Part shown: positions 12,974-55,284 of the stretch, piece by piece
Numbering within the stretch: position 1 is the first letter of the stretch
Layout: every line of letters begins with the position of its first letter
Assembly: GCF_001194135.2 (NCBI RefSeq)
Contig: NC_069000.1
Location: forward strand, 4,490,570-4,545,998
DNA length: 55,429 nt
Direction: 5' to 3'
Source of the DNA: Octopus bimaculoides
Taxonomy: Eukaryota
Notes under the pieces: model-generated
Seen by the model: the letters and a program-made list of their open reading frames with translations, nothing else
Databases searched by the model: none
Told to the model about the DNA's origin: nothing
Made by a program: the position numbers and the translations under genes

Positions 12974-13104
12974 CAGAGGTGCAATCTGTGTGGGTGTTTT
13001 TTCAAAACACTGTCTGGTTTAAAAAGCCACATCAGACGCCATGAAAGGGCTAAGGTGTAGGTGCAGGAGGTGGTCAAACTCTGTTTAAGGAGTAGACAAC
13101 CACC
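12974..13104 (+). mobile_element. RTE-clade LINE 3' end encoding a C2H2 finger
   Basis: 12974-13060 reads QRCNLCGCFFKTLSGLKSHIRRHERAKV* (C-x2-C-x12-H-x3-H), then a short UTR ending ggagtagacaaccacc and an (ATATGT) tail; BovB-type RTEs end in such a finger. Confidence 0.65.
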
Positions 13105-13986
13105 ATATGTATATGTATATATATANNNNNNNNNNNNNNNNNNNNNNNNNNNNNNNNNNNNNNNNNNNNNNNNNNNNNNNNNNNNNNNNNNNNNNNNNNN
13201 NNNNNNNNNNNNNNNNNNNNNNNNNNNNNNNNNNNNNNNNNNNNNNNNNNNNNNNNNNNNNNNNNNNNNNNNNNNNNNNNNNNNNNNNNNNNNNNNNNNN
13301 NNNNNNNNNNNNNNNNNNNNNNNNNNNNNNNNNNNNNNNNNNNNNNNNNNNNNNNNNNNNNNNNNNNNNNNNNNNNNNNNNNNNNNNNNNNNNNNNNNNN
13401 NNNNNNNNNNNNNNNNNNNNNNNNNNNNNNNNNNNNNNNNNNNNNNNNNNNNNNNNNNNNNNNNNNNNNNNNNNNNNNNNNNNNNNNNNNNNNNNNNNNN
13501 NNNNNNNNNNNNNNNNNNNNNNNNNNNNNNNNNNNNNNNNNNNNNNNNNNNNNNNNNNNNNNNNNNNNNNNNNNNNNNNNNNNNNNNNNNNNNNNNNNNN
13601 NNNNNNNNNNNNNNNNNNNNNNNNNNNNNNNNNNNNNNNNNNNNNNNNNNNNNNNNNNNNNNNNNNNNNNNNNNNNNNNNNNNNNNNNNNNNNNNNNNNN
13701 NNNNNNNNNNNNNNNNNNNNNNNNNNNNNNNNNNNNNNNNNNNNNNNNNNNNNNNNNNNNNNNNNNNNNNNNNNNNNNNNNNNNNNNNNNNNNNNNNNNN
13801 NNNNNNNNNNNNNNNNNNNNNNNNNNNNNNNNNNNNNNNNNNNNNNNNNNNNNNNNNNNNNNNNNNNNNNNNNNNNNNNNNNNNNNNNNNNNNNNNNNNN
13901 NNNNNNNNNNNNNNNNNNNNNNNNNNNNNNNNNNNNNNNNNNNNNNNNNNNNNNNNNNNNNNNNNNNNNNNNNNNNNNNNNNNNNN

Positions 13987-15070: not shown

Positions 15071-16804
15071 ATATATATATATATATACAAGACGACGAAC
15101 TCTCGGGATGTTGTTAAACCATTTATATCTTGAATTGTTCAACATATGTTTGGACAGATGCACTCCAAAATGTCCGACAGGATAAATTATTATAGTCAGC
15201 AATGCATCAATCTCATCATATATCTGTACATATGTATATTTGTATGTGTGTGTGTGTGCGTGTGCGTGTGCATGTGGTTATGTTTGTATGTATGAGGCAG
15301 ACAACCAGAAATCATTTTGAAACTAAACTATATTTGTTTAGTATCCTGTTGTAAACAACGTACGTTCAATTTATATTCTGCTGTAATAAAGGCCACTTAC
15401 GTGAGTAAAAAAAATGTCTTTCTTTACAACGTTTAATCATTTTTCTTAGAATATAAATACTGCGAAATACCACAAATAACCATGCTGTTAGCAGGAGAAG
15501 TTAATCGAGGTTAGAAAAAAAAATAATGAAAGAATACTAACTATTACACTCAATTACTATAATAAAGTCGGTTTTATTTAATTTCCGTGCGTAATATTTA
15601 CCGCTAAAACTAAACTATTTATTTTACATTTCTGTAAATAGTTCAATGACATTGTTTGTCTTTATTATTTTCGGAGTCCGTTAAAATTTTATTTTTACAC
15701 ATACATACATACATACATACATACATACATACATACATACATACATACATACACACACACATACATACACAAGTACATACATATGTATGTGCGTATGTCA
15801 GTGTGTGTATGTATGTATATATATATANNNNNNNNNNNNNNNNNNNNNNNNNNNNNNNNNNNNNNNNNNNNNNNNNNNNNNNNNNNNNNNNNNNNNNNNN
15901 NNNNNNNNNNNNNNNNNNNNNNNNNNNNNNNNNNNNNNNNNNNNNNNNNNNNNNNNNNNNNNNNNNNNNNNNNNNNNNNNNNNNNNNNNNNNNNNNNNNN
16001 NNNNNNNNNNNNNNNNNNNNNNNNNNNNNNNNNNNNNNNNNNNNNNNNNNNNNNNNNNNNNNNNNNNNNNNNNNNNNNNNNNNNNNNNNNNNNNNNNNNN
16101 NNNNNNNNNNNNNNNNNNNNNNNNNNNNNNNNNNNNNNNNNNNNNNNNNNNNNNNNNNNNNNNNNNNNNNNNNNNNNNNNNNNNNNNNNNNNNNNNNNNN
16201 NNNNNNNNNNNNNNNNNNNNNNNNNNNNNNNNNNNNNNNNNNNNNNNNNNNNNNNNNNNNNNNNNNNNNNNNNNNNNNNNNNNNNNNNNNNNNNNNNNNN
16301 NNNNNNNNNNNNNNNNNNNNNNNNNNNNNNNNNNNNNNNNNNNNNNNNNNNNNNNNNNNNNNNNNNNNNNNNNNNNNNNNNNNNNNNNNNNNNNNNNNNN
16401 NNNNNNNNNNNNNNNNNNNNNNNNNNNNNNNNNNNNNNNNNNNNNNNNNNNNNNNNNNNNNNNNNNNNNNNNNNNNNNNNNNNNNNNNNNNNNNNNNNNN
16501 NNNNNNNNNNNNNNNNNNNNNNNNNNNNNNNNNNNNNNNNNNNNNNNNNNNNNNNNNNNNNNNNNNNNNNNNNNNNNNNNNNNNNNNNNNNNNNNNNNNN
16601 NNNNNNNNNNNNNNNNNNNNNNNNNNNNNNNNNNNNNNNNNNNNNNNNNNNNNNNNNNNNNNNNNNNNNNNNNNNNNNNNNNNNNNNNNNNNNNNNNNNN
16701 NNNNNNNNNNNNNNNNNNNNNNNNNNNNNNNNNNNNNNNNNNNNNNNNNNNNNNNNNNNNNNNNNNNNNNNNNNNNNNNNNNNNNNNNNNNNNNNNNNNN
16801 NNNN

Positions 16805-20640: not shown

Positions 20641-20770
20641 TATATATATATATACTTTTGTACTCTATATATACTTTTGTACTCTATATATACTTTTNNN
20701 NNNNNNNNNNNNNNNNNNNNNNNNNNNNNNNNNNNNNNNNNNNNNNNNNNNNNNNNNNNNNNATATATAT

Positions 20771-21130
20771 ATGAAAATGAAAGAAAAAGAGGATATCTAT
20801 AGACAACTGCTTCGAAATCACCAGCTTCTATATTCAGACTATGAATTCATATTCATACCAATAGTAATTGGAGCACTAGGTTTTGTTAGAAATTGGTTAA
20901 GGGAGAATCTGGATAAACTGAGATTTTCAGAAAGAGAAATCGACCGCCGGCTAATTCGTACATTACAAGTGCAAACTGTGAGTGGAACAATAAAAATATG
21001 CAAGACTTTTCTCAAGTTCCAAATGTGAATTTGTCTGTGCTAACTACATCCCAAAGATGGAGCCGTGTCTCCTGGTTGGAAACCGACTCCCACCTCAGTG
21101 GAAAATTTATAATAATTAAATAATAGAAGA
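20771..21130 (+). mobile_element. R4/Dong-like lineage T 3' end (copy c), endonuclease C-terminus plus 3' UTR
   Basis: KEKEDIYRQLLRNHQLLYSDYEFIFIPIVIGALGFV...SGTIKICKTFLKFQM*; PIVIGALG is the hallmark C-terminal RLE motif of R4/Dong elements; followed by (TACA)n 21134-21168. Confidence 0.85.
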
Positions 21131-21170
21131 GATATACATACATACATACATACATACAAACATACATATG

Positions 21171-21378
21171 AAAGCTTGGATTTTCATAAAACGAAATCAA
21201 CTGATTCGCACTTTACAATACAAATAAGCGGAACTGTAAAAATATGCAAGACTTTTCTTAAGTTTAAAATACGACATTGTTTTCGTTATCTACATTCCAA
21301 AGATGGAGCTCTGTATCTTTGTTAGAAACCAGCTCCTTCTTCAGAGGAAGATTTTAAAAGATTAAATACAGAATAGAC
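21171..21378 (+). mobile_element. R4/Dong-like lineage T 3' end (copy d)
   Basis: KLGFS*NEIN..LIRTLQ..ISGTVKICKTFLKFKI, then ccaaagatggagctctgtatctttgttagaaacc; starts immediately after the (TACA)n array. Confidence 0.85.
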
Positions 21379-22129
21379 ATATGTACACTTGCAAAACGAC
21401 ACATGTTTATATATGTAAATATATGCATATATTAACTTGTGTGTGTGTTTCTGTGTTTGTGTGTTCCTGTATAACATTGCTGTTAATAATGACAATAAAT
21501 ACATATATTAATTTTATTGGATTGTTTTGATAAAAATTACAAGAAAAAAATAAAACAAAAATATTTAAGATATAGAAAAGTATGTTTCTTTTTAAATTCA
21601 GATATTTACATATTGTAATTAACTTGGCAAAGAACACTCTTGGAAAAGGAAAGAATATAAACGAAACACTTTCTTTTCACCTTAATATTTGTTTTAATGT
21701 CTTAGAAAGTGAAAATTTACTCAAATGCTTAATAAATATCAAATAAGCTTAAATGTATACGAAGAAATGTGTAACAGAACGATATAACAGAGCCTGTCAA
21801 GAAGGAACAGCTATAGCAACTGGATGGGAATCAAGAACGGGTGGATCTCGGAGAGGCGTTATTTAAATTGCCGCAACGGATTTAAATTTAGCAGATTTGT
21901 GGCTAAATACATACACACACACACACGCTCAGGCAAACAGACTGACAGACAGATACACACACACACACACAAACACACAAACACACACATCCATGTGAAA
22001 ATAGGAAGGGTATCCCTAGTTTTGTTGTTCTAGTCACATTATTGGGAAAGAAATTGTTGTGGTCGTGGTTGGAAAGTTTTTGGTCATGTGTGCATGATTG
22101 GGGGTGATCTACGACTGAAAAACACCATT

Positions 22130-30299: not shown

Positions 30300-30425
30300 T
30301 GATTAGAAACTTGCCAACTGCGTCCTGCTGCGAGGAACCTTAGGCAAGTATTTTGTGATATAGCCGCGAGTCGATCAAAGCCTTGTGAGTGGATTTCGTA
30401 GATGGAAAGTGAAAGAAAACTGTCG
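30300..30425 (+). mobile_element. SINE-B 5' half, diverged
   Basis: ctgcgaggaaccttaggcaagta...caaagccttgtgagtggatttcgtagatggaaagtgaaagaa. Confidence 0.8.
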
Positions 30426-30435
30426 TGAATGTATG

Positions 30436-30481
<46 letters not shown>

Positions 30482-30526
30482 TGTATGTATGTATGTATGT
30501 ATGTATGTAGGTAGGTATGTATATAT

Positions 30527-30625
30527 GTCATTATTCAGTTTATTTCAAGATTTCTTGCTAATAGAGAAAGAACCGGTTTCTAACCTAGATCCAAGGCTCC
30601 TTCATTGGAGTTTCAACAACAATAA
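30527..30625 (-). mobile_element. R4/Dong-like lineage T 3' UTR (copy e)
   Basis: Reverse complement of the 8580-8676 sequence; its 3' end abuts a long (TACA)n array (30429-30526, read as TATG on plus). Confidence 0.75.
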
Positions 30626-45140: not shown

Positions 45141-45247
45141 GTTATTCGGTTTTATTCCTATTTCTTTCCAACGTAGAATGAACCGGTTTCTAACCTACAT
45201 CCAAGTCTCCTTCACTAAAATTTTAAATAACATCAACAAAGTATTTG
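45141..45247 (-). mobile_element. R4/Dong-like lineage T 3' UTR (copy f)
   Basis: Reverse complement gtgaaggagacttggatgtaggttagaaaccgg...ggaataaaaccgaataac matches 8600-8676. Confidence 0.7.
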
Positions 45248-45515: not shown

Positions 45516-46049
45516 GCAGTAACAACAACAGCAAAGCTACGAACACAACAATAGATTTCGTAATTTCGGAAATATCTCCATTCTTTTCGTATCAACAAAA
45601 TATATTCCTGGTTACATAATAACCAACCCTGATAAGTTTCAATTATTTCCACTTTCAGGATATCGAACCATTAATTAGCTTTAAAGCATAGTTTTAGTCC
45701 GATTACAAGTGGAGATAAACCTCTCTCTTTCTTTCTTTCTCTCTCAATAATCATTATGATTATCATATACCGTTTTCAAAGATGGAACAATGGTACCAAA
45801 TCCCAAAACATTCTTCATACAAGGAGATTAGAACTATCGAAGTATCGAAGTATCATTAAATTCGATTGTTTAATAGCAATTCCTTGTTGAAATATTTCAT
45901 TCTGATATCGATTATTGATTAAAACTATTTTAGGATATAAGTGATTTTTGAGGAAACCATCCATTATAGTTGATACCATTGCTAGTGACATGGCACTGTC
46001 GAGTTTTGGTTTCAAGTTACGTAGCGTAGATAGTTGTTGTATGGCTAAG

Positions 46050-46175
46050 GTATACGCCTTGCCAACAGCTTGGGGCAAGTTTCGATCCCAGTGCACGGAA
46101 CTTCAAACGTGTATTCTCTTGTAATCAGGTGTTGGCCAGTACCTTTTGAGACAAATTGGTTCACGGAAACGGAGT
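46050..46175 (+). mobile_element. Old, diverged SINE-B 5' half
   Basis: gtttcgatcccagtgcacgg...gtgtattctc...ttggttcacggaaacggag is colinear with the SINE-B head, then (TACA)n. Confidence 0.5.
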
Positions 46176-47199
46176 ACATACATACATACATACATACATA
46201 CATACATACATACATACATACATACATACATAAATACATACATACGTACGTACGTACATGCATACATGCATACGTGCTTACACACATGCATATATACATA
46301 CAAAATAAATACATGCATACATAAATACATGTATACACACATACTTACGTACATACACATGCATATATATATATATATATATATATATANNNNNNNNNNN
46401 NNNNNNNNNNNNNNNNNNNNNNNNNNNNNNNNNNNNNNNNNNNNNNNNNNNNNNNNNNNNNNNNNNNNNNNNNNNNNNNNNNNNNNNNNNNNNNNNNNNN
46501 NNNNNNNNNNNNNNNNNNNNNNNNNNNNNNNNNNNNNNNNNNNNNNNNNNNNNNNNNNNNNNNNNNNNNNNNNNNNNNNNNNNNNNNNNNNNNNNNNNNN
46601 NNNNNNNNNNNNNNNNNNNNNNNNNNNNNNNNNNNNNNNNNNNNNNNNNNNNNNNNNNNNNNNNNNNNNNNNNNNNNNNNNNNNNNNNNNNNNNNNNNNN
46701 NNNNNNNNNNNNNNNNNNNNNNNNNNNNNNNNNNNNNNNNNNNNNNNNNNNNNNNNNNNNNNNNNNNNNNNNNNNNNNNNNNNNNNNNNNNNNNNNNNNN
46801 NNNNNNNNNNNNNNNNNNNNNNNNNNNNNNNNNNNNNNNNNNNNNNNNNNNNNNNNNNNNNNNNNNNNNNNNNNNNNNNNNNNNNNNNNNNNNNNNNNNN
46901 NNNNNNNNNNNNNNNNNNNNNNNNNNNNNNNNNNNNNNNNNNNNNNNNNNNNNNNNNNNNNNNNNNNNNNNNNNNNNNNNNNNNNNNNNNNNNNNNNNNN
47001 NNNNNNNNNNNNNNNNNNNNNNNNNNNNNNNNNNNNNNNNNNNNNNNNNNNNNNNNNNNNNNNNNNNNNNNNNNNNNNNNNNNNNNNNNNNNNNNNNNNN
47101 NNNNNNNNNNNNNNNNNNNNNNNNNNNNNNNNNNNNNNNNNNNNNNNNNNNNNNNNNNNNNNNNNNNNNNNNNNNNNNNNNNNNNNNNNNNNNNNNNNN

Positions 47200-47272
<73 letters not shown>

Positions 47273-47292: not shown

Positions 47293-47670
47293 GAGATCAA
47301 CTGCCCTGCTAATGTGAAAATCGCTTCGAAAATCAAAGAGGAGAAAAGATAACTACGGACAATTGTTAGGAAACCACCGGCCTCTACTTCTAAAATATAA
47401 ATTCATCACGTTTATACCAATAATAATAGGTTTAGTTGGTTTTCTGAGTTATTGCCAAAGTAACAATCTGGGTAAAGCAGGGTCTTCAGATTGCGAAATC
47501 AACCAGCAAATTCGTACATTATACTCGTGGTTCAAAACTATAGTTGGAACAATAAAAATATACAAGACTTTTCTCAAGTTTATTTTTGTTATCTTTATTC
47601 CCACGATGGAACTCTGTGTCTATATTAGAAACCAATTATTTTCTTGCAGGAAGATTTCAAATAATTACAT
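47293..47670 (+). mobile_element. R4/Dong-like lineage T 3' end (copy g), includes the active-site motif
   Basis: EINCPANVKIASKIKEE(fs)DNYGQLLGNHRPLL...FIPIIIGLVGF...VGTIKIYKTFLKF, then cccacgatggaactctgtgtctatattagaaacc. Confidence 0.85.
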
Positions 47671-48254
47671 CATAACCTAATATTCTAGAAAGACAGCAGC
47701 CAGAGAAACAGATAGATAAATAGAAAGATAGATAGATTGATAGATAGATAGATGGGTAAATGGACAGATAGATAAATACATAGATAGCGATATACAGAGA
47801 TAACATAGGGAAAGTGCACCGGAATGAAACTAGTTCTGTATCCACTCTGAAGTTGCCAACAATGGGAACTGCATTCAGAATAGAGAAGGCCAGAACAAAT
47901 ATCGTAAAACATTTTTATACGACCTTCTAACGACTCAACTAGATGACCATCTTTTGGATGATTTATTTCCACGTGTTCATTTATTTCAATGCGACGGTTG
48001 GCTGTAATGAGGGTCTTTAGCTGTGGTGGTTGGTGGCCTATTAGTTTTGTGTGCTGATGGTATTTAGGTTGTAACACACAAACTTAACGATGATAGATCG
48101 TGGTCAGGAAGCAAATGAGAATCGTTTCAACATTTCTTGCAATTATCTTCAAGAATTGGAACAGCTCAAACGTTGCTCCATTTCGTTAATGTCGTAAGGA
48201 AACATAAAGATTCTTATTAGAGATATATGATAGATGCGTGCGTGTGTGTGTATG

Positions 48255-54526: not shown

Positions 54527-54711
54527 ACATGCGTGTTCTCTTCAGTTTTTAGTTAAATTCTTTTTTTTTTTTTTCGAGAAAGGAGCTGGTTTCTAACAAA
54601 TATATGAAGCTCCATCGTTGGAAAGTAGAGAGCGAAAACAATATCACATTTCAAACTTGAAAACATCTTGCACATTTTTACTGTTCCTCTTACAAATCGT
54701 ATCTGCGATGC
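54527..54711 (-). mobile_element. R4/Dong-like lineage T 3' end (copy h)
   Basis: Reverse complement ggaacagtaaaaatgtgcaagatgttttcaagtttg (GTVKMCK...), then ccaacgatggagcttc...gttagaaaccagc. Confidence 0.75.
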
Positions 54712-55284
54712 GCGTCTAACTTGGTTGATGTCTTTTTATGAAAATCTTAGCTTATCTAGATTCTCACAAAACCAAACGATCCAATTATTATTGGTTCAAA
54801 TGTAAATTCGTAAACTGGATATACAAAACGGAGGTCTCATTTTATGTATATGTATGTATGTATGTGAGTGTATGTATGCTTGCAAGCATGCATGTATGTA
54901 TGAGTGAGTGTAAGTTGTTTACTTATCTGCTCATAAGCACTAATTCTAGATCTATTCCAAAATACAAAACGAGTATCACGTAGGAAGACGTTGATAGATA
55001 TCTACAGCGAATACGTTAATGCACTTTAATATTTTCTCATTACATCTGAATTATTATTGGCTTCGTTATGGAGCCTTTAGAATATTAAAGAAAAGATTAA
55101 TCCTTTATCGTAACAGCACCGAAACGAGATAAGATATATAGATATTCATACTTTCTAAAGATACGTGTGTCTTTTTGTACATACATACGAACGAATATAT
55201 ATGTATGTGTGTGTGTATCTTTATATATTCATAGACGCACATATATATCTACATATGTATGTTTATATATATATGATTATATAT

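What the first reader, a model, noticed from the sequence alone, without database searches (positions are those of the whole stretch)
20771..21378. R4/Dong-like retrotransposon lineage associated with (TACA)n
Seen: eight 3' ends in the window (1083, 8564, 20771, 21171, 30527, 45141, 47293, 54527), five with RLE C-terminal coding (E-I-x-C-P, PIxIG(A/L)xG, GTxKxCKxFLKF) and all sharing a (g/a)ttagaaacc-like UTR motif (degenerate in copy a). Here two copies are stacked head to tail with only (TACA)n between them, and copies b, c, e and f end in TACA-rich sequence on the sense strand. Known: Dong elements target (TAA)n. Inference: this lineage has shifted to a (TACA)n target, a specificity I do not know to be described. 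Copies a, g and h lack a clear array, so specificity may be loose or the array may be a tail.
Basis: partly seen in the sequence, partly recalled or inferred. Interest (0 to 1): 0.78.

Follow-up and report, generated by a model that had tools for sequence, protein, structure and literature searches.

The report
Dong-like LINE with TACA-repeat tails
The window holds eight decayed 3' ends of a Dong-type jumping gene already known to be abundant in octopus genomes; the family ends in a (TACA)n repeat, and copies usually have the same repeat at their 5' end too, a modest and not fully proven twist on the known (TAA)n habit of Dong elements.

Summary
The window contains exactly eight 5'-truncated 3' ends of one LINE family. 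Five keep C-terminal coding sequence, and all eight share a 3'-UTR motif.

Full-length relatives fetched from other assemblies encode about 1150 aa. They have a reverse transcriptase, a CCHC knuckle and a restriction-like endonuclease, and no AP endonuclease. R2 proteins are the nearest solved structures. This fits the 'Dong/R4' LINEs already published for octopus.

The UTR motif is the 3' arm of a hairpin with a YTTGTT loop, and the hairpin is well supported by covariation.

The (TACA)n array belongs to the element. Genome-wide, 381 of about 506 reads that reach the 3' end of the commonest subfamily continue as (ATAC)n.

Arrays of the same unit and strand also sit at most 5' junctions, both in the window (3 of 7) and in twelve loci from other genomes. 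Some of these 5' arrays abut non-element DNA. A sister lineage does the same with (ACTT)n.

This favours insertion into matching microsatellites, including the tails of resident copies. It is not proven. One full-length copy carries its 5' arrays inside a 108-bp target duplication, and another has no 5' array. No empty sites could be examined.

Verdict: a new variant of a known kind, of moderate interest.

The parts
1083..1330 (+). Copy a: decayed 3' end (coding remnant ...SGTVKICKRFLKS plus a degenerate UTR hairpin at about 1247-1277). No clean array at either end.
8478..8564 (+). (ATAC)n array of about 22 units directly 5' of copy b. It is preceded by (TATC)19 and an assembly gap.
8565..8676 (+). 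Copy b: UTR-only piece ending ...aataatgac. Hairpin at 8605-8636.
8677..8726 (+). Tail of copy b: imperfect then perfect (CATA)n.
20764..21133 (+). Copy c: last 85 codons of the ORF (stop at 21026-21028) plus the 3' UTR. Hairpin at 21059-21090. Its 5' side runs into an N gap.
21134..21170 (+). (TACA)n-like array of about 9 units: the tail of copy c and at the same time the 5' flank of copy d.
21171..21379 (+). Copy d: last ~20 codons (...SGTVKICKTFLKF) plus the UTR. Hairpin at 21305-21336. Stacked head to tail on copy c. Only a short degenerate TACA-like stretch follows it.
30428..30526 (-). Tail of copy e: about 20 units of (TACA)n on the element's sense strand (TGTA on the + strand).
30527..30620 (-). 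Copy e: UTR-only piece. Hairpin at 30569-30600. Its 5' end abuts an unrelated SINE-like repeat.
45141..45240 (-). Copy f: UTR-only piece. Hairpin at 45179-45210. Degenerate TACA-like sequence lies on both sides.
47293..47695 (+). Copy g: about 95 decayed codons starting at ...EINCP, plus the UTR. Hairpin at 47608-47639. Its 5' flank is (GA)n and a gap. There is no TACA tail; a (GATA)n-like array starts about 20 bp downstream.
54527..54826 (-). Copy h: decayed coding (...PIIIGSFG...GTVKMCK) plus the UTR. Hairpin at 54582-54613. No clean tail.
54827..54900 (-). Degenerate (TACA)n-like array of about 15 units on the sense strand, directly 5' of copy h. No other copy lies upstream of it.

Best explanation
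These are eight old, 5'-truncated insertions of a Dong-like (R4-clade-type) non-LTR retrotransposon that carries a restriction-like endonuclease. This kind of element is already known to be abundant in octopus genomes.

A full element is about 4.2 kb. It has a 5' UTR of about 200-260 nt, one ORF of about 1150 aa and a 3' UTR. The ORF encodes a conserved N-terminal three-helix domain, a reverse transcriptase, a CCHC knuckle and a PD-(D/E)xK endonuclease. The 3' UTR contains a conserved hairpin (two 6-bp stems, loop YTTGTT) about 40-60 nt before the end. The transcript ends in an (ACAU)n repeat.

Inferred mechanism, by analogy with R2, Dong and 'stringent' LINEs:
1. The protein binds its own RNA through the hairpin.
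2. The endonuclease nicks DNA.
3. Reverse transcription is primed at the nick, with the (ACAU)n tail pairing or slipping on the target.

Under this mechanism integration is favoured in (TACA)n microsatellites, including the tails left by earlier copies. That would produce head-to-tail stacks such as c-d, and arrays on both sides of many copies. Most copies are 5'-truncated because reverse transcription is incomplete.

Shown here: the family, its domains, the hairpin, the tail, and arrays at both junctions. Inferred: hairpin recognition, tail-target pairing, and a preference for (TACA)n targets.
For: **Family and domains.**
- establish eight copies and the C-terminal coding.
- Searches give homologues with CCHC and HN(R/K)PD..E.SCP.D motifs, and full ORFs of 1130-1200 aa.
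- One search finds RVT_1 and zf-RVT only, with no Exo_endo_phos.
- One search finds R2 proteins as the best PDB matches (E = 3e-28).
- PMC13282606 and PMC9115989 report Dong-R4 in Octopus, with a mean recent insertion of about 4.19 kb.

**Abundance.** Read depth is 400-1200x (c type) and about 3400x (b type) at roughly 1x genome sampling, rising towards the 3' end. The single-copy control depth is 2-4.

**Hairpin.**
- All 12 pairs show changes on both sides.
- 81.7% of cells are paired, against 66% in shuffles and 29-53% in slid controls.
- RNAalifold finds the same hairpin.

**Tail.**
- 381 of about 506 reads reaching window position 8676 continue as (ATAC)n.
- d-type ends continue as (ACAT)n or (CA)n.
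- RNA reads run from the 3' end into (TACA)n.

**5' arrays.**
- In the window, copies b, d and h have one (P = 1e-5).
- L003 is a full-length copy with (CATA)41 between unique DNA and its 5' UTR.
- L006 copy 1 is truncated and has (ATAC)6 inside an unrelated integrase-like sequence.
- L002 has a short degenerate array.
- L001 and L006 hold stacks of different subfamilies separated by (CATA)n.
- By regex, 16 of 22 scorable copies in the loci have a same-unit sense array at the 5' junction. No antisense array occurs in any locus.

**Flank unit follows the element's own tail unit.** In one and the same assembly (ERZ25878469), the ACAT-type copy (L008) is flanked by ACAT arrays and the ACTT-type copies (L004, L011) by ACTT arrays.
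Against: - No empty (pre-insertion) site was seen, so nothing shows directly that an array was there before insertion.
- L008 is a full-length ACAT-type copy. Its roughly 260 bp of 5' arrays lie inside a 108-bp duplication of flanking DNA ((GATA)n plus a 64-bp unique stretch). There the target was not (TACA)n, and the 5' arrays came in with the element or were added during insertion.
- L010 (full length) has a (ACAT)24 tail but no 5' array.
- Window copies a, e and g lack a 5' array. Copies a, d, g and h lack a clean tail.
- Three of the L007 copies share one truncation point and one junction, so they are tandem duplicates of a unit and not independent insertions.
- In the non-window loci, apart from the (GATA)n and (ACAG)n arrays in L008 and L005, virtually every tetranucleotide array touches a copy. 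The elements clearly make these arrays, and free target arrays look rare there.
- Clade assignment rests on domain architecture and published annotation, not on a phylogeny.
- Rfam finds no HDV-like ribozyme at the 5' ends.
- The N-terminal domain gives no significant Myb match.
Confidence: 0.6

Rival explanations
1. Tail only, with no target preference. The (ACAU)n repeat is simply the 3' end of the RNA, as in many LINEs with microsatellite tails. Under this view, arrays at 5' junctions and head-to-tail stacks arise during or after insertion, in three ways:
- The R2-like reverse transcriptase jumps from the 5' end of one (often broken) RNA to the repeat tail of another, giving chimeric stacked cDNAs or a short terminal array.
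- Full-length copies carry upstream array sequence from read-through transcripts of donors that themselves sit behind an array.
- Unequal exchange between arrays duplicates units.
For: - In L008 the 5' arrays are inside a 108-bp target duplication, and the target was a (GATA)n/unique site.
- L010 has a tail but no 5' array.
- L007 contains duplicated units with identical junctions.
- Almost all arrays in the loci touch a copy, so the elements generate them.
- End-to-end template jumping is an established property of the R2 reverse transcriptase (own knowledge: Bibillo and Eickbush 2002).
Against: - 5'-truncated solo copies have a sense array between them and unrelated DNA (L006 copy 1, L002, window h and probably b).
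- Stacks combine different subfamilies with different truncation points and arrays of up to about 75 units (L001).
- The 5' array has the element's own unit in every scorable case. Both models predict this, so it does not discriminate.
Confidence: 0.3
2. Coincidence with a microsatellite-rich genome. TACA-type arrays are simply common in this genome, and the copies happen to lie next to them.
For: The window is very rich in simple repeats (425 TRF rows). Seven of its 12 perfect TACA arrays are not next to a recognised copy.
Against: - P is about 1e-5 for each end in the window, and orientation is always sense.
- 381 of about 506 genomic reads continue from the element end into (ATAC)n.
- The same holds in independent genomes, with no antisense arrays.
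Confidence: 0.01
3. Correct mechanism but a different clade. The family is an RLE-type LINE of another early-branching clade (HERO or NeSL-like) and not R4/Dong. Some HERO and NeSL-related families are also microsatellite-specific.
For: - No phylogeny was possible.
- Defining Dong/R4 extras (5' HDV-like ribozyme, N-terminal Myb-like domain) were not detected.
- The target is not (TAA)n.
- Microsatellite-specific HERO families and (TG)n-specific Togen families exist (PMC4640811).
Against: - Octopus genomes are reported to hold thousands of Dong-R4 copies of about 4.2 kb but very few Hero or R2 copies (PMC13282606, Table 1). The abundance and length seen here fit Dong-R4.
- There is no N-terminal zinc finger or protease domain, as NeSL would have.
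Confidence: 0.09

Closest known systems
Dong (Bombyx mori) and DongAg / DongBg, R4 clade
   Same: Single-ORF LINE with RT, CCHC and a C-terminal restriction-like endonuclease, and no AP endonuclease. It ends in a microsatellite, and the same microsatellite is found on both sides. Copies lie outside genes. Dong-type elements are reported in molluscs, including Octopus (PMC3812793, PMC7998251, PMC9115989).
   Different: [quoted passage not shown] Here it is the tetranucleotide (ACAT)n, sometimes (CA)n, and (ACTT)n in a sister lineage. Dong's 5' HDV-like ribozyme (PMC3774820) was not detected here.
R4 of nematodes and R2 (rDNA-specific RLE LINEs)
   Same: Same enzyme architecture. R2 proteins are the nearest solved structures. 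The 3'-UTR RNA structure is presumed to be bound by the protein to start target-primed reverse transcription.
   Different: R4 and R2 insert at one 28S rDNA site. R2 has N-terminal zinc-finger and Myb domains, which Pfam did not find here.
Waldo (R1 clade)
   Same: Targets ACAY microsatellites, the same repeat class as (ACAT)n/(CA)n (PMC3812793).
   Different: Waldo uses an AP-type endonuclease and belongs to an unrelated clade of insects. No Exo_endo_phos domain is present here.
Togen (NeSL-related, (TG)n-specific) and microsatellite-specific HERO families
   Same: RLE LINEs with specificity for a simple repeat (PMC4640811).
   Different: Different clades and different repeat units. These are known from fish and other taxa.
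Stringent-type LINE 3' ends, e.g. eel UnaL2 (own knowledge: Kajikawa and Okada 2002)
   Same: A conserved stem-loop shortly before a short tandem-repeat tail. Both are needed for recognition and initiation in UnaL2.
   Different: UnaL2 is an AP-endonuclease LINE of the L2 clade with a (TGTAA)n tail and no microsatellite target preference.

Membership tests
RLE-type (R2-group) non-LTR retrotransposon | Reverse transcriptase domain of the LINE type | tested here: met
   RVT_1 with E = 1e-22 to 1e-26 in five full-length relatives. R2 RT is the best PDB match, E = 3e-28. The window copies themselves keep only the C-terminus.
RLE-type (R2-group) non-LTR retrotransposon | C-terminal CCHC knuckle followed by a PD-(D/E)xK restriction-like endonuclease, and no AP endonuclease | tested here: met
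   C-x2-C...H-x4-C and HN(R/K)PD...E(F/V)SCP.D.N...K were read in the homologues. zf-RVT gives weak hits and there is no Exo_endo_phos. The CCHC region aligns to R2. Window copy g keeps 'EINCP'. Catalysis was not tested.
R4/Dong clade | RT phylogeny groups with R4, Dong and Rex6 | not testable with these tools
   No Repbase or Dfam reference sequences were available. The assignment rests on architecture and on published RepeatMasker classes for Octopus (PMC13282606, PMC8967140, PMC9115989).
R4/Dong clade | No N-terminal zinc fingers, and a divergent Myb/SANT-like N-terminal domain (PMC7998251) | tested here: inconclusive
   Pfam finds no zinc finger. A conserved N-terminal domain (R11, Y13, W19, K48, W51, D52, P56, L66 invariant in the 18 aligned sequences) folds as three helices with pLDDT 85. 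There is no significant Myb/SANT match by profile or fold.
R4/Dong clade | HDV-like self-cleaving ribozyme at the 5' end (PMC3774820) | tested here: inconclusive
   No Rfam hit in any of the eight loci scanned (L001-L008), nor at two of the 5' ends at E up to 10. Such ribozymes are often missed by covariance models. A shared 5' motif, CGA.GAGGA.GGAGCTC, was seen in L003, L004 and L009.
R4/Dong clade | Site-specific insertion into rDNA or a microsatellite, with the repeat on both flanks | tested here: inconclusive
   Same-unit sense arrays sit at both junctions of most copies. However, L008 has its 5' arrays inside a target duplication, L010 has none, and no empty sites were seen.
Dong proper | (TAA)n tail and target | tested here: not met
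   Tails are (ACAT)n or (CA)n in the window's genome, and (ACAT)n or (ACTT)n in the related loci. No (TAA)n was found at any junction.
Waldo (R1 clade, ACAY target) | AP-type endonuclease N-terminal to the RT | tested here: not met
   No Exo_endo_phos domain in the full-length relatives.
Stringent-type LINE 3' end | Conserved stem-loop close to a tandem-repeat tail | tested here: met
   The hairpin shows compensatory changes in all 12 pairs. A repeat tail directly follows the element. Function was not tested.

The most novel reading that the evidence does not exclude
In this Dong-like group the insertion site is chosen largely by base pairing between the RNA's repeat tail and the nicked target, and not by protein-DNA recognition. 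A change of tail unit (ACAT to ACTT, apparently more than once among close subfamilies) would then immediately retarget the element to the matching microsatellite. The elements would also seed the very arrays they later use, growing head-to-tail stacks. That would make it a naturally 'RNA-programmable' RLE retrotransposon.
Probability: 0.25. Interest if true: 0.65.

Novelty: new variant of a known kind. Interest (0 to 1): 0.4.

Why it matters
Microsatellite-specific LINEs are a small, well-defined group, and Dong is the textbook (TAA)n case. A Dong-like group whose tail and flanking repeat are tetranucleotides, and differ between sister lineages within one genome, offers three things:
- A natural comparison for asking what sets target choice in restriction-like-endonuclease LINEs: the protein domain or RNA-target pairing. 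This is relevant to current efforts to retarget R2-type elements.
- An explanation for part of the striking (ACAT)n microsatellite load and the gap-prone, stacked repeat structure of octopus assemblies.
- A compact, covariation-supported 3' hairpin as a candidate recognition signal.

It does not change any general picture, and the element family itself is already catalogued.

Tried and rejected
- **Protein search with the 85-aa C-terminus alone** gave 3 short hits. A 4-sequence profile gave only fragments of 204 aa or less. Full-length ORFs came only after using an RT found in a fetched locus. No protein from the window's own species was in the collection, so no further loci of that genome could be fetched.
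- **Read laying including the array** was swamped by microsatellite reads.
- **Read laying on copy c without the array** showed only subfamily breakpoints among its six listed loose ends. A genome-wide 5'-junction census was therefore not possible.
- **Long-read runs** were not available.
The species of the ENA assemblies remain unknown, apart from Argonauta hians (L005).
- **Target-site duplications around the window copies:** none were found.
- **HDV-like ribozyme:** no Rfam hit.
- **N-terminal Myb-like domain:** no support from Pfam, a PDB profile search or Foldseek.
- **A tRNA-like sequence at 46040-46174 that ends in (TACA)14** looked like a SINE partner. It is single-copy in the reads and has no other copy in the window, so the idea was dropped.
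- **Supplements of PMC9115989** hold no Dong consensus sequence to compare with.
- **A quick NJ tree of the C-terminal 130 aa** is star-like and unsupported. It is used only as a hint.
- **Empty-site search in sister species** was not attempted. The available runs are about 1x coverage, and the copies (about 4-6% from the read consensus) probably predate the species split.

Full report
**What the window is.** It is AT-rich, extremely rich in simple repeats (425 TRF rows) and broken by 15 N gaps. It carries SINE-like repeats. Public runs that hold it belong to one organism, and the literature on Dong-R4 in Octopus fits what follows. The organism name was not disclosed to me. I call it octopus-like on the basis of its repeats (own knowledge) and the homology to an Argonauta hians protein.

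**Observation.** blastn with copy c, direct reading and translation confirm eight pieces:
- a: 1083-1330, + strand
- b: 8565-8676, + strand
- c: 20764-21133, + strand
- d: 21171-21379, + strand
- e: 30527-30620, - strand
- f: 45141-45240, - strand
- g: 47293-47695, + strand
- h: 54527-54826, - strand

Copies a, c, d, g and h keep decayed C-terminal codons (PI.IG..G, SGT.KICKTFLKF, and EINCP in g). Copies b, e and f are UTR-only. A profile of the shared UTR motif finds these eight sites and no others, and tblastn with a full-length relative finds no RT-coding part in the window. Copies c and d are stacked head to tail across about 37 bp of (TACA)n-like sequence. Copies b, c and e have clean sense-strand TACA tails. 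Copies b, d and h also have sense TACA arrays at their 5' ends. Five of the 12 perfect TACA arrays (4 or more units) in the window abut a copy in sense orientation. The chance of 3 of 8 3' ends, or 3 of 7 5' ends, is about 1e-5 each.

**What the element is.** Homologues of the C-terminus show a CCHC knuckle followed by HN(R/K)PD...E(F/V)SCP.D.N...K, a PD-(D/E)xK restriction-like endonuclease, and then the PI.IGALG...GT.KICKTF end. A locus fetched through one of them (L001) supplied an RT. That RT retrieved full ORFs of 1130-1200 aa, including a protein of the octopod Argonauta hians. Pfam sees RVT_1 and weak zf-RVT, no AP endonuclease and no zinc fingers. The best solved relatives are R2 proteins (E = 3e-28).

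Full copies span about 4.2 kb (L008 and L009). This matches the mean length of the 1129 'recently active Dong-R4' insertions reported for O. vulgaris (4,732,901 bp / 1129; PMC13282606). A full-length 'Dong' consensus was also noted in the O. bimaculoides repeat library (PMC9115989). I therefore accept 'Dong/R4-like', but without a phylogeny. Two published extras of the clade could not be confirmed. No HDV-like ribozyme was found by Rfam. The conserved N-terminal domain folds confidently as three helices but gives no significant Myb/SANT match.

**Abundance.** One DNA run was sampled at about 1.9 Gb. Against copy c it gives 400-1200x depth, rising towards the 3' end as expected for 5'-truncated LINEs. 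Copy c differs from the read majority at 22 of 361 positions. The b-type hairpin region reaches about 3400x, while a single-copy control gives 2-4x. The family therefore has on the order of a thousand copies. RNA reads cover it at low level in both orientations, and some run into (TACA)n.

**The UTR motif is a hairpin.** Fifteen 3' UTRs from the window and from five lineages in other genomes were aligned. All 12 pairs show changes on both sides. In total 81.7% of cells pair, against 66% in shuffles and 29-53% when the partner is slid. RNAalifold predicts the same hairpin independently. It lies about 40-60 nt before the tail. By analogy with R2 3' UTRs and with stringent LINEs such as UnaL2 (own knowledge), it is the likely recognition site for the element's protein.

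**The array is the tail.** Of about 506 reads reaching the last bases of the b-type end, 381 continue as (ATAC)n, and another 119 do so after a small indel. d-type ends continue as (ACAT)n or (CA)n. Relatives in four of the ENA assemblies and in Argonauta end the same way.

**Is it also the target?** Twelve loci were fetched by protein identity alone, so they were not selected for repeats. In them, 16 of 22 scorable copies have an array of the element's own unit, on the sense strand, at the 5' junction. The array lies 0-56 bp from truncated starts and 192-260 bp upstream of the ATG of full-length copies. No antisense array occurs.

Telling cases in favour:
- L003 is full length and has (CATA)41 between unrelated DNA and its 5' UTR.
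- L006 copy 1 is truncated and has (ATAC)6 inside an integrase-like sequence.
- L002 has a short degenerate array.
- Window copy h has a 5' array with no other copy upstream.
- L001 holds three copies of two subfamilies separated by (CATA)59 and (CATA)75.

A sister lineage behaves identically with (ACTT)n (L004, L009, L011, L012). In one assembly, ACAT-type and ACTT-type copies are each flanked by their own unit. This is what insertion into matching microsatellites predicts, as described for Dong and (TAA)n (PMC3812793, PMC7998251).

**Why it is not proven.** Four observations hold it back:
- In L008 the full-length copy and about 260 bp of 5' ACAT-type arrays lie inside a 108-bp duplication of (GATA)n plus unique DNA at 90.7% identity. 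This looks like a long target-site duplication of a non-TACA site. The 5' arrays there came with the RNA (read-through from a donor behind an array) or were added during insertion.
- L010 has a (ACAT)24 tail and no 5' array.
- Three L007 copies are duplicates of one unit.
- The R2-type enzyme's known end-to-end template jumping could build stacks, or add a short terminal array, in one event.

No empty site, long read or genome-wide 5' census was available. I put target preference at about 0.6 and tail-only at about 0.3.

**Comparison and novelty.** RLE LINEs are typically specific for repeats. R4 and R2 use rDNA, Dong uses (TAA)n, Togen uses (TG)n, and some HERO families use microsatellites (PMC4640811). 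ACAY repeats are a known LINE target, but of the unrelated AP-endonuclease element Waldo (PMC3812793). I found no paper linking a Dong/R4 element to (ACAT)n or (ACTT)n, though I could not consult Repbase or Dfam. The family itself is already catalogued in octopus. What is added here is:
- the tetranucleotide tail and flank;
- its apparent lability between sister lineages (a hint only);
- the covarying hairpin;
- one instructive long target duplication.

Noticed in passing
L008 8397-8504 and 12765-12872: A 108-bp direct duplication (90.7% identity; (GATA)n plus a 64-bp unique stretch) brackets a full-length ACAT-type copy together with its 5' arrays: (TACA)12 T (CATC)9 CAA (CCAT)9 (ACAT)6 ... 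(TACA)22. It looks like an unusually long target-site duplication with about 260 bp of extra repeat at the 5' junction.
   Followed up: partly
L004 8387-19327; L009 8318-12754; L011 8136-17486; L012 3821-13141: A sister lineage of the same LINE group has (ACTT)n/(TTAC)n in place of (ACAT)n at both ends. It is also stacked head to tail, and it co-occurs with an ACAT-type copy in the same assembly (ERZ25878469). In a rough tree the two tail types are interleaved.
   Followed up: partly
window about 8632-8638 and about 21036 (seen in reads, not in the window sequence): In a subset of genomic copies (about 46-100 reads per breakpoint) the sequence just after the hairpin, or after the stop codon, continues as the perfect palindrome AGGTTCGTCCATCGATCGATGGACGAACCT. 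This could be an inserted MITE-like element or a subfamily-specific module. It is unexplained.
   Followed up: no
L004 about 7900-8386 and about 13030-13708: An unrelated repeat ending ...ggcgaataaaaa is followed by the same (CTTA)n array and is stacked in the same orientation between Dong-like copies. It may be a non-autonomous partner or another LINE that shares the tail.
   Followed up: no
L001 1685-2017; L007 2900-3400 and equivalents; L002 10560-10660: One subfamily carries a 17-18-bp minisatellite (gtctatattgtctgrg)n of variable length inside its 3' UTR, between the stop codon and the hairpin.
   Followed up: no
window 46040-46232: A tRNA-like, SINE-looking sequence directly followed by (TACA)14. 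Read depth shows it is single-copy (2-4x), so this is a free-standing TACA array and not a SINE tail.
   Followed up: yes
window 30300-30526: The (TGTA)n array that serves as the tail of copy e (- strand) is bordered on its other side by the 3' end of a + strand SINE-like repeat. Two retroposon ends therefore face each other across one array.
   Followed up: no
window 8081-8404, 15828-16804, 20698-20762, 46390-47199 and others: Many assembly gaps sit directly beside microsatellite arrays or LINE ends (for example (TATC)n at 8405 and (GA)n at 47200). Some junctions (5' of b, c and g) cannot be read for this reason.
   Followed up: no
window 47696-47790: Copy g has no TACA tail, but a (GATA)n-like array starts about 20 bp downstream. 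This recalls the (GATA)n target of the L008 copy.
   Followed up: no
L003 4621-4660; L004 14896-14940; L009 8382-8420: The 5' ends of full-length copies of different lineages share the motif CGA.GAGGA.GGAGCTC immediately after the upstream array. It is not matched by any Rfam family and may be a 5' processing or promoter element.
   Followed up: partly
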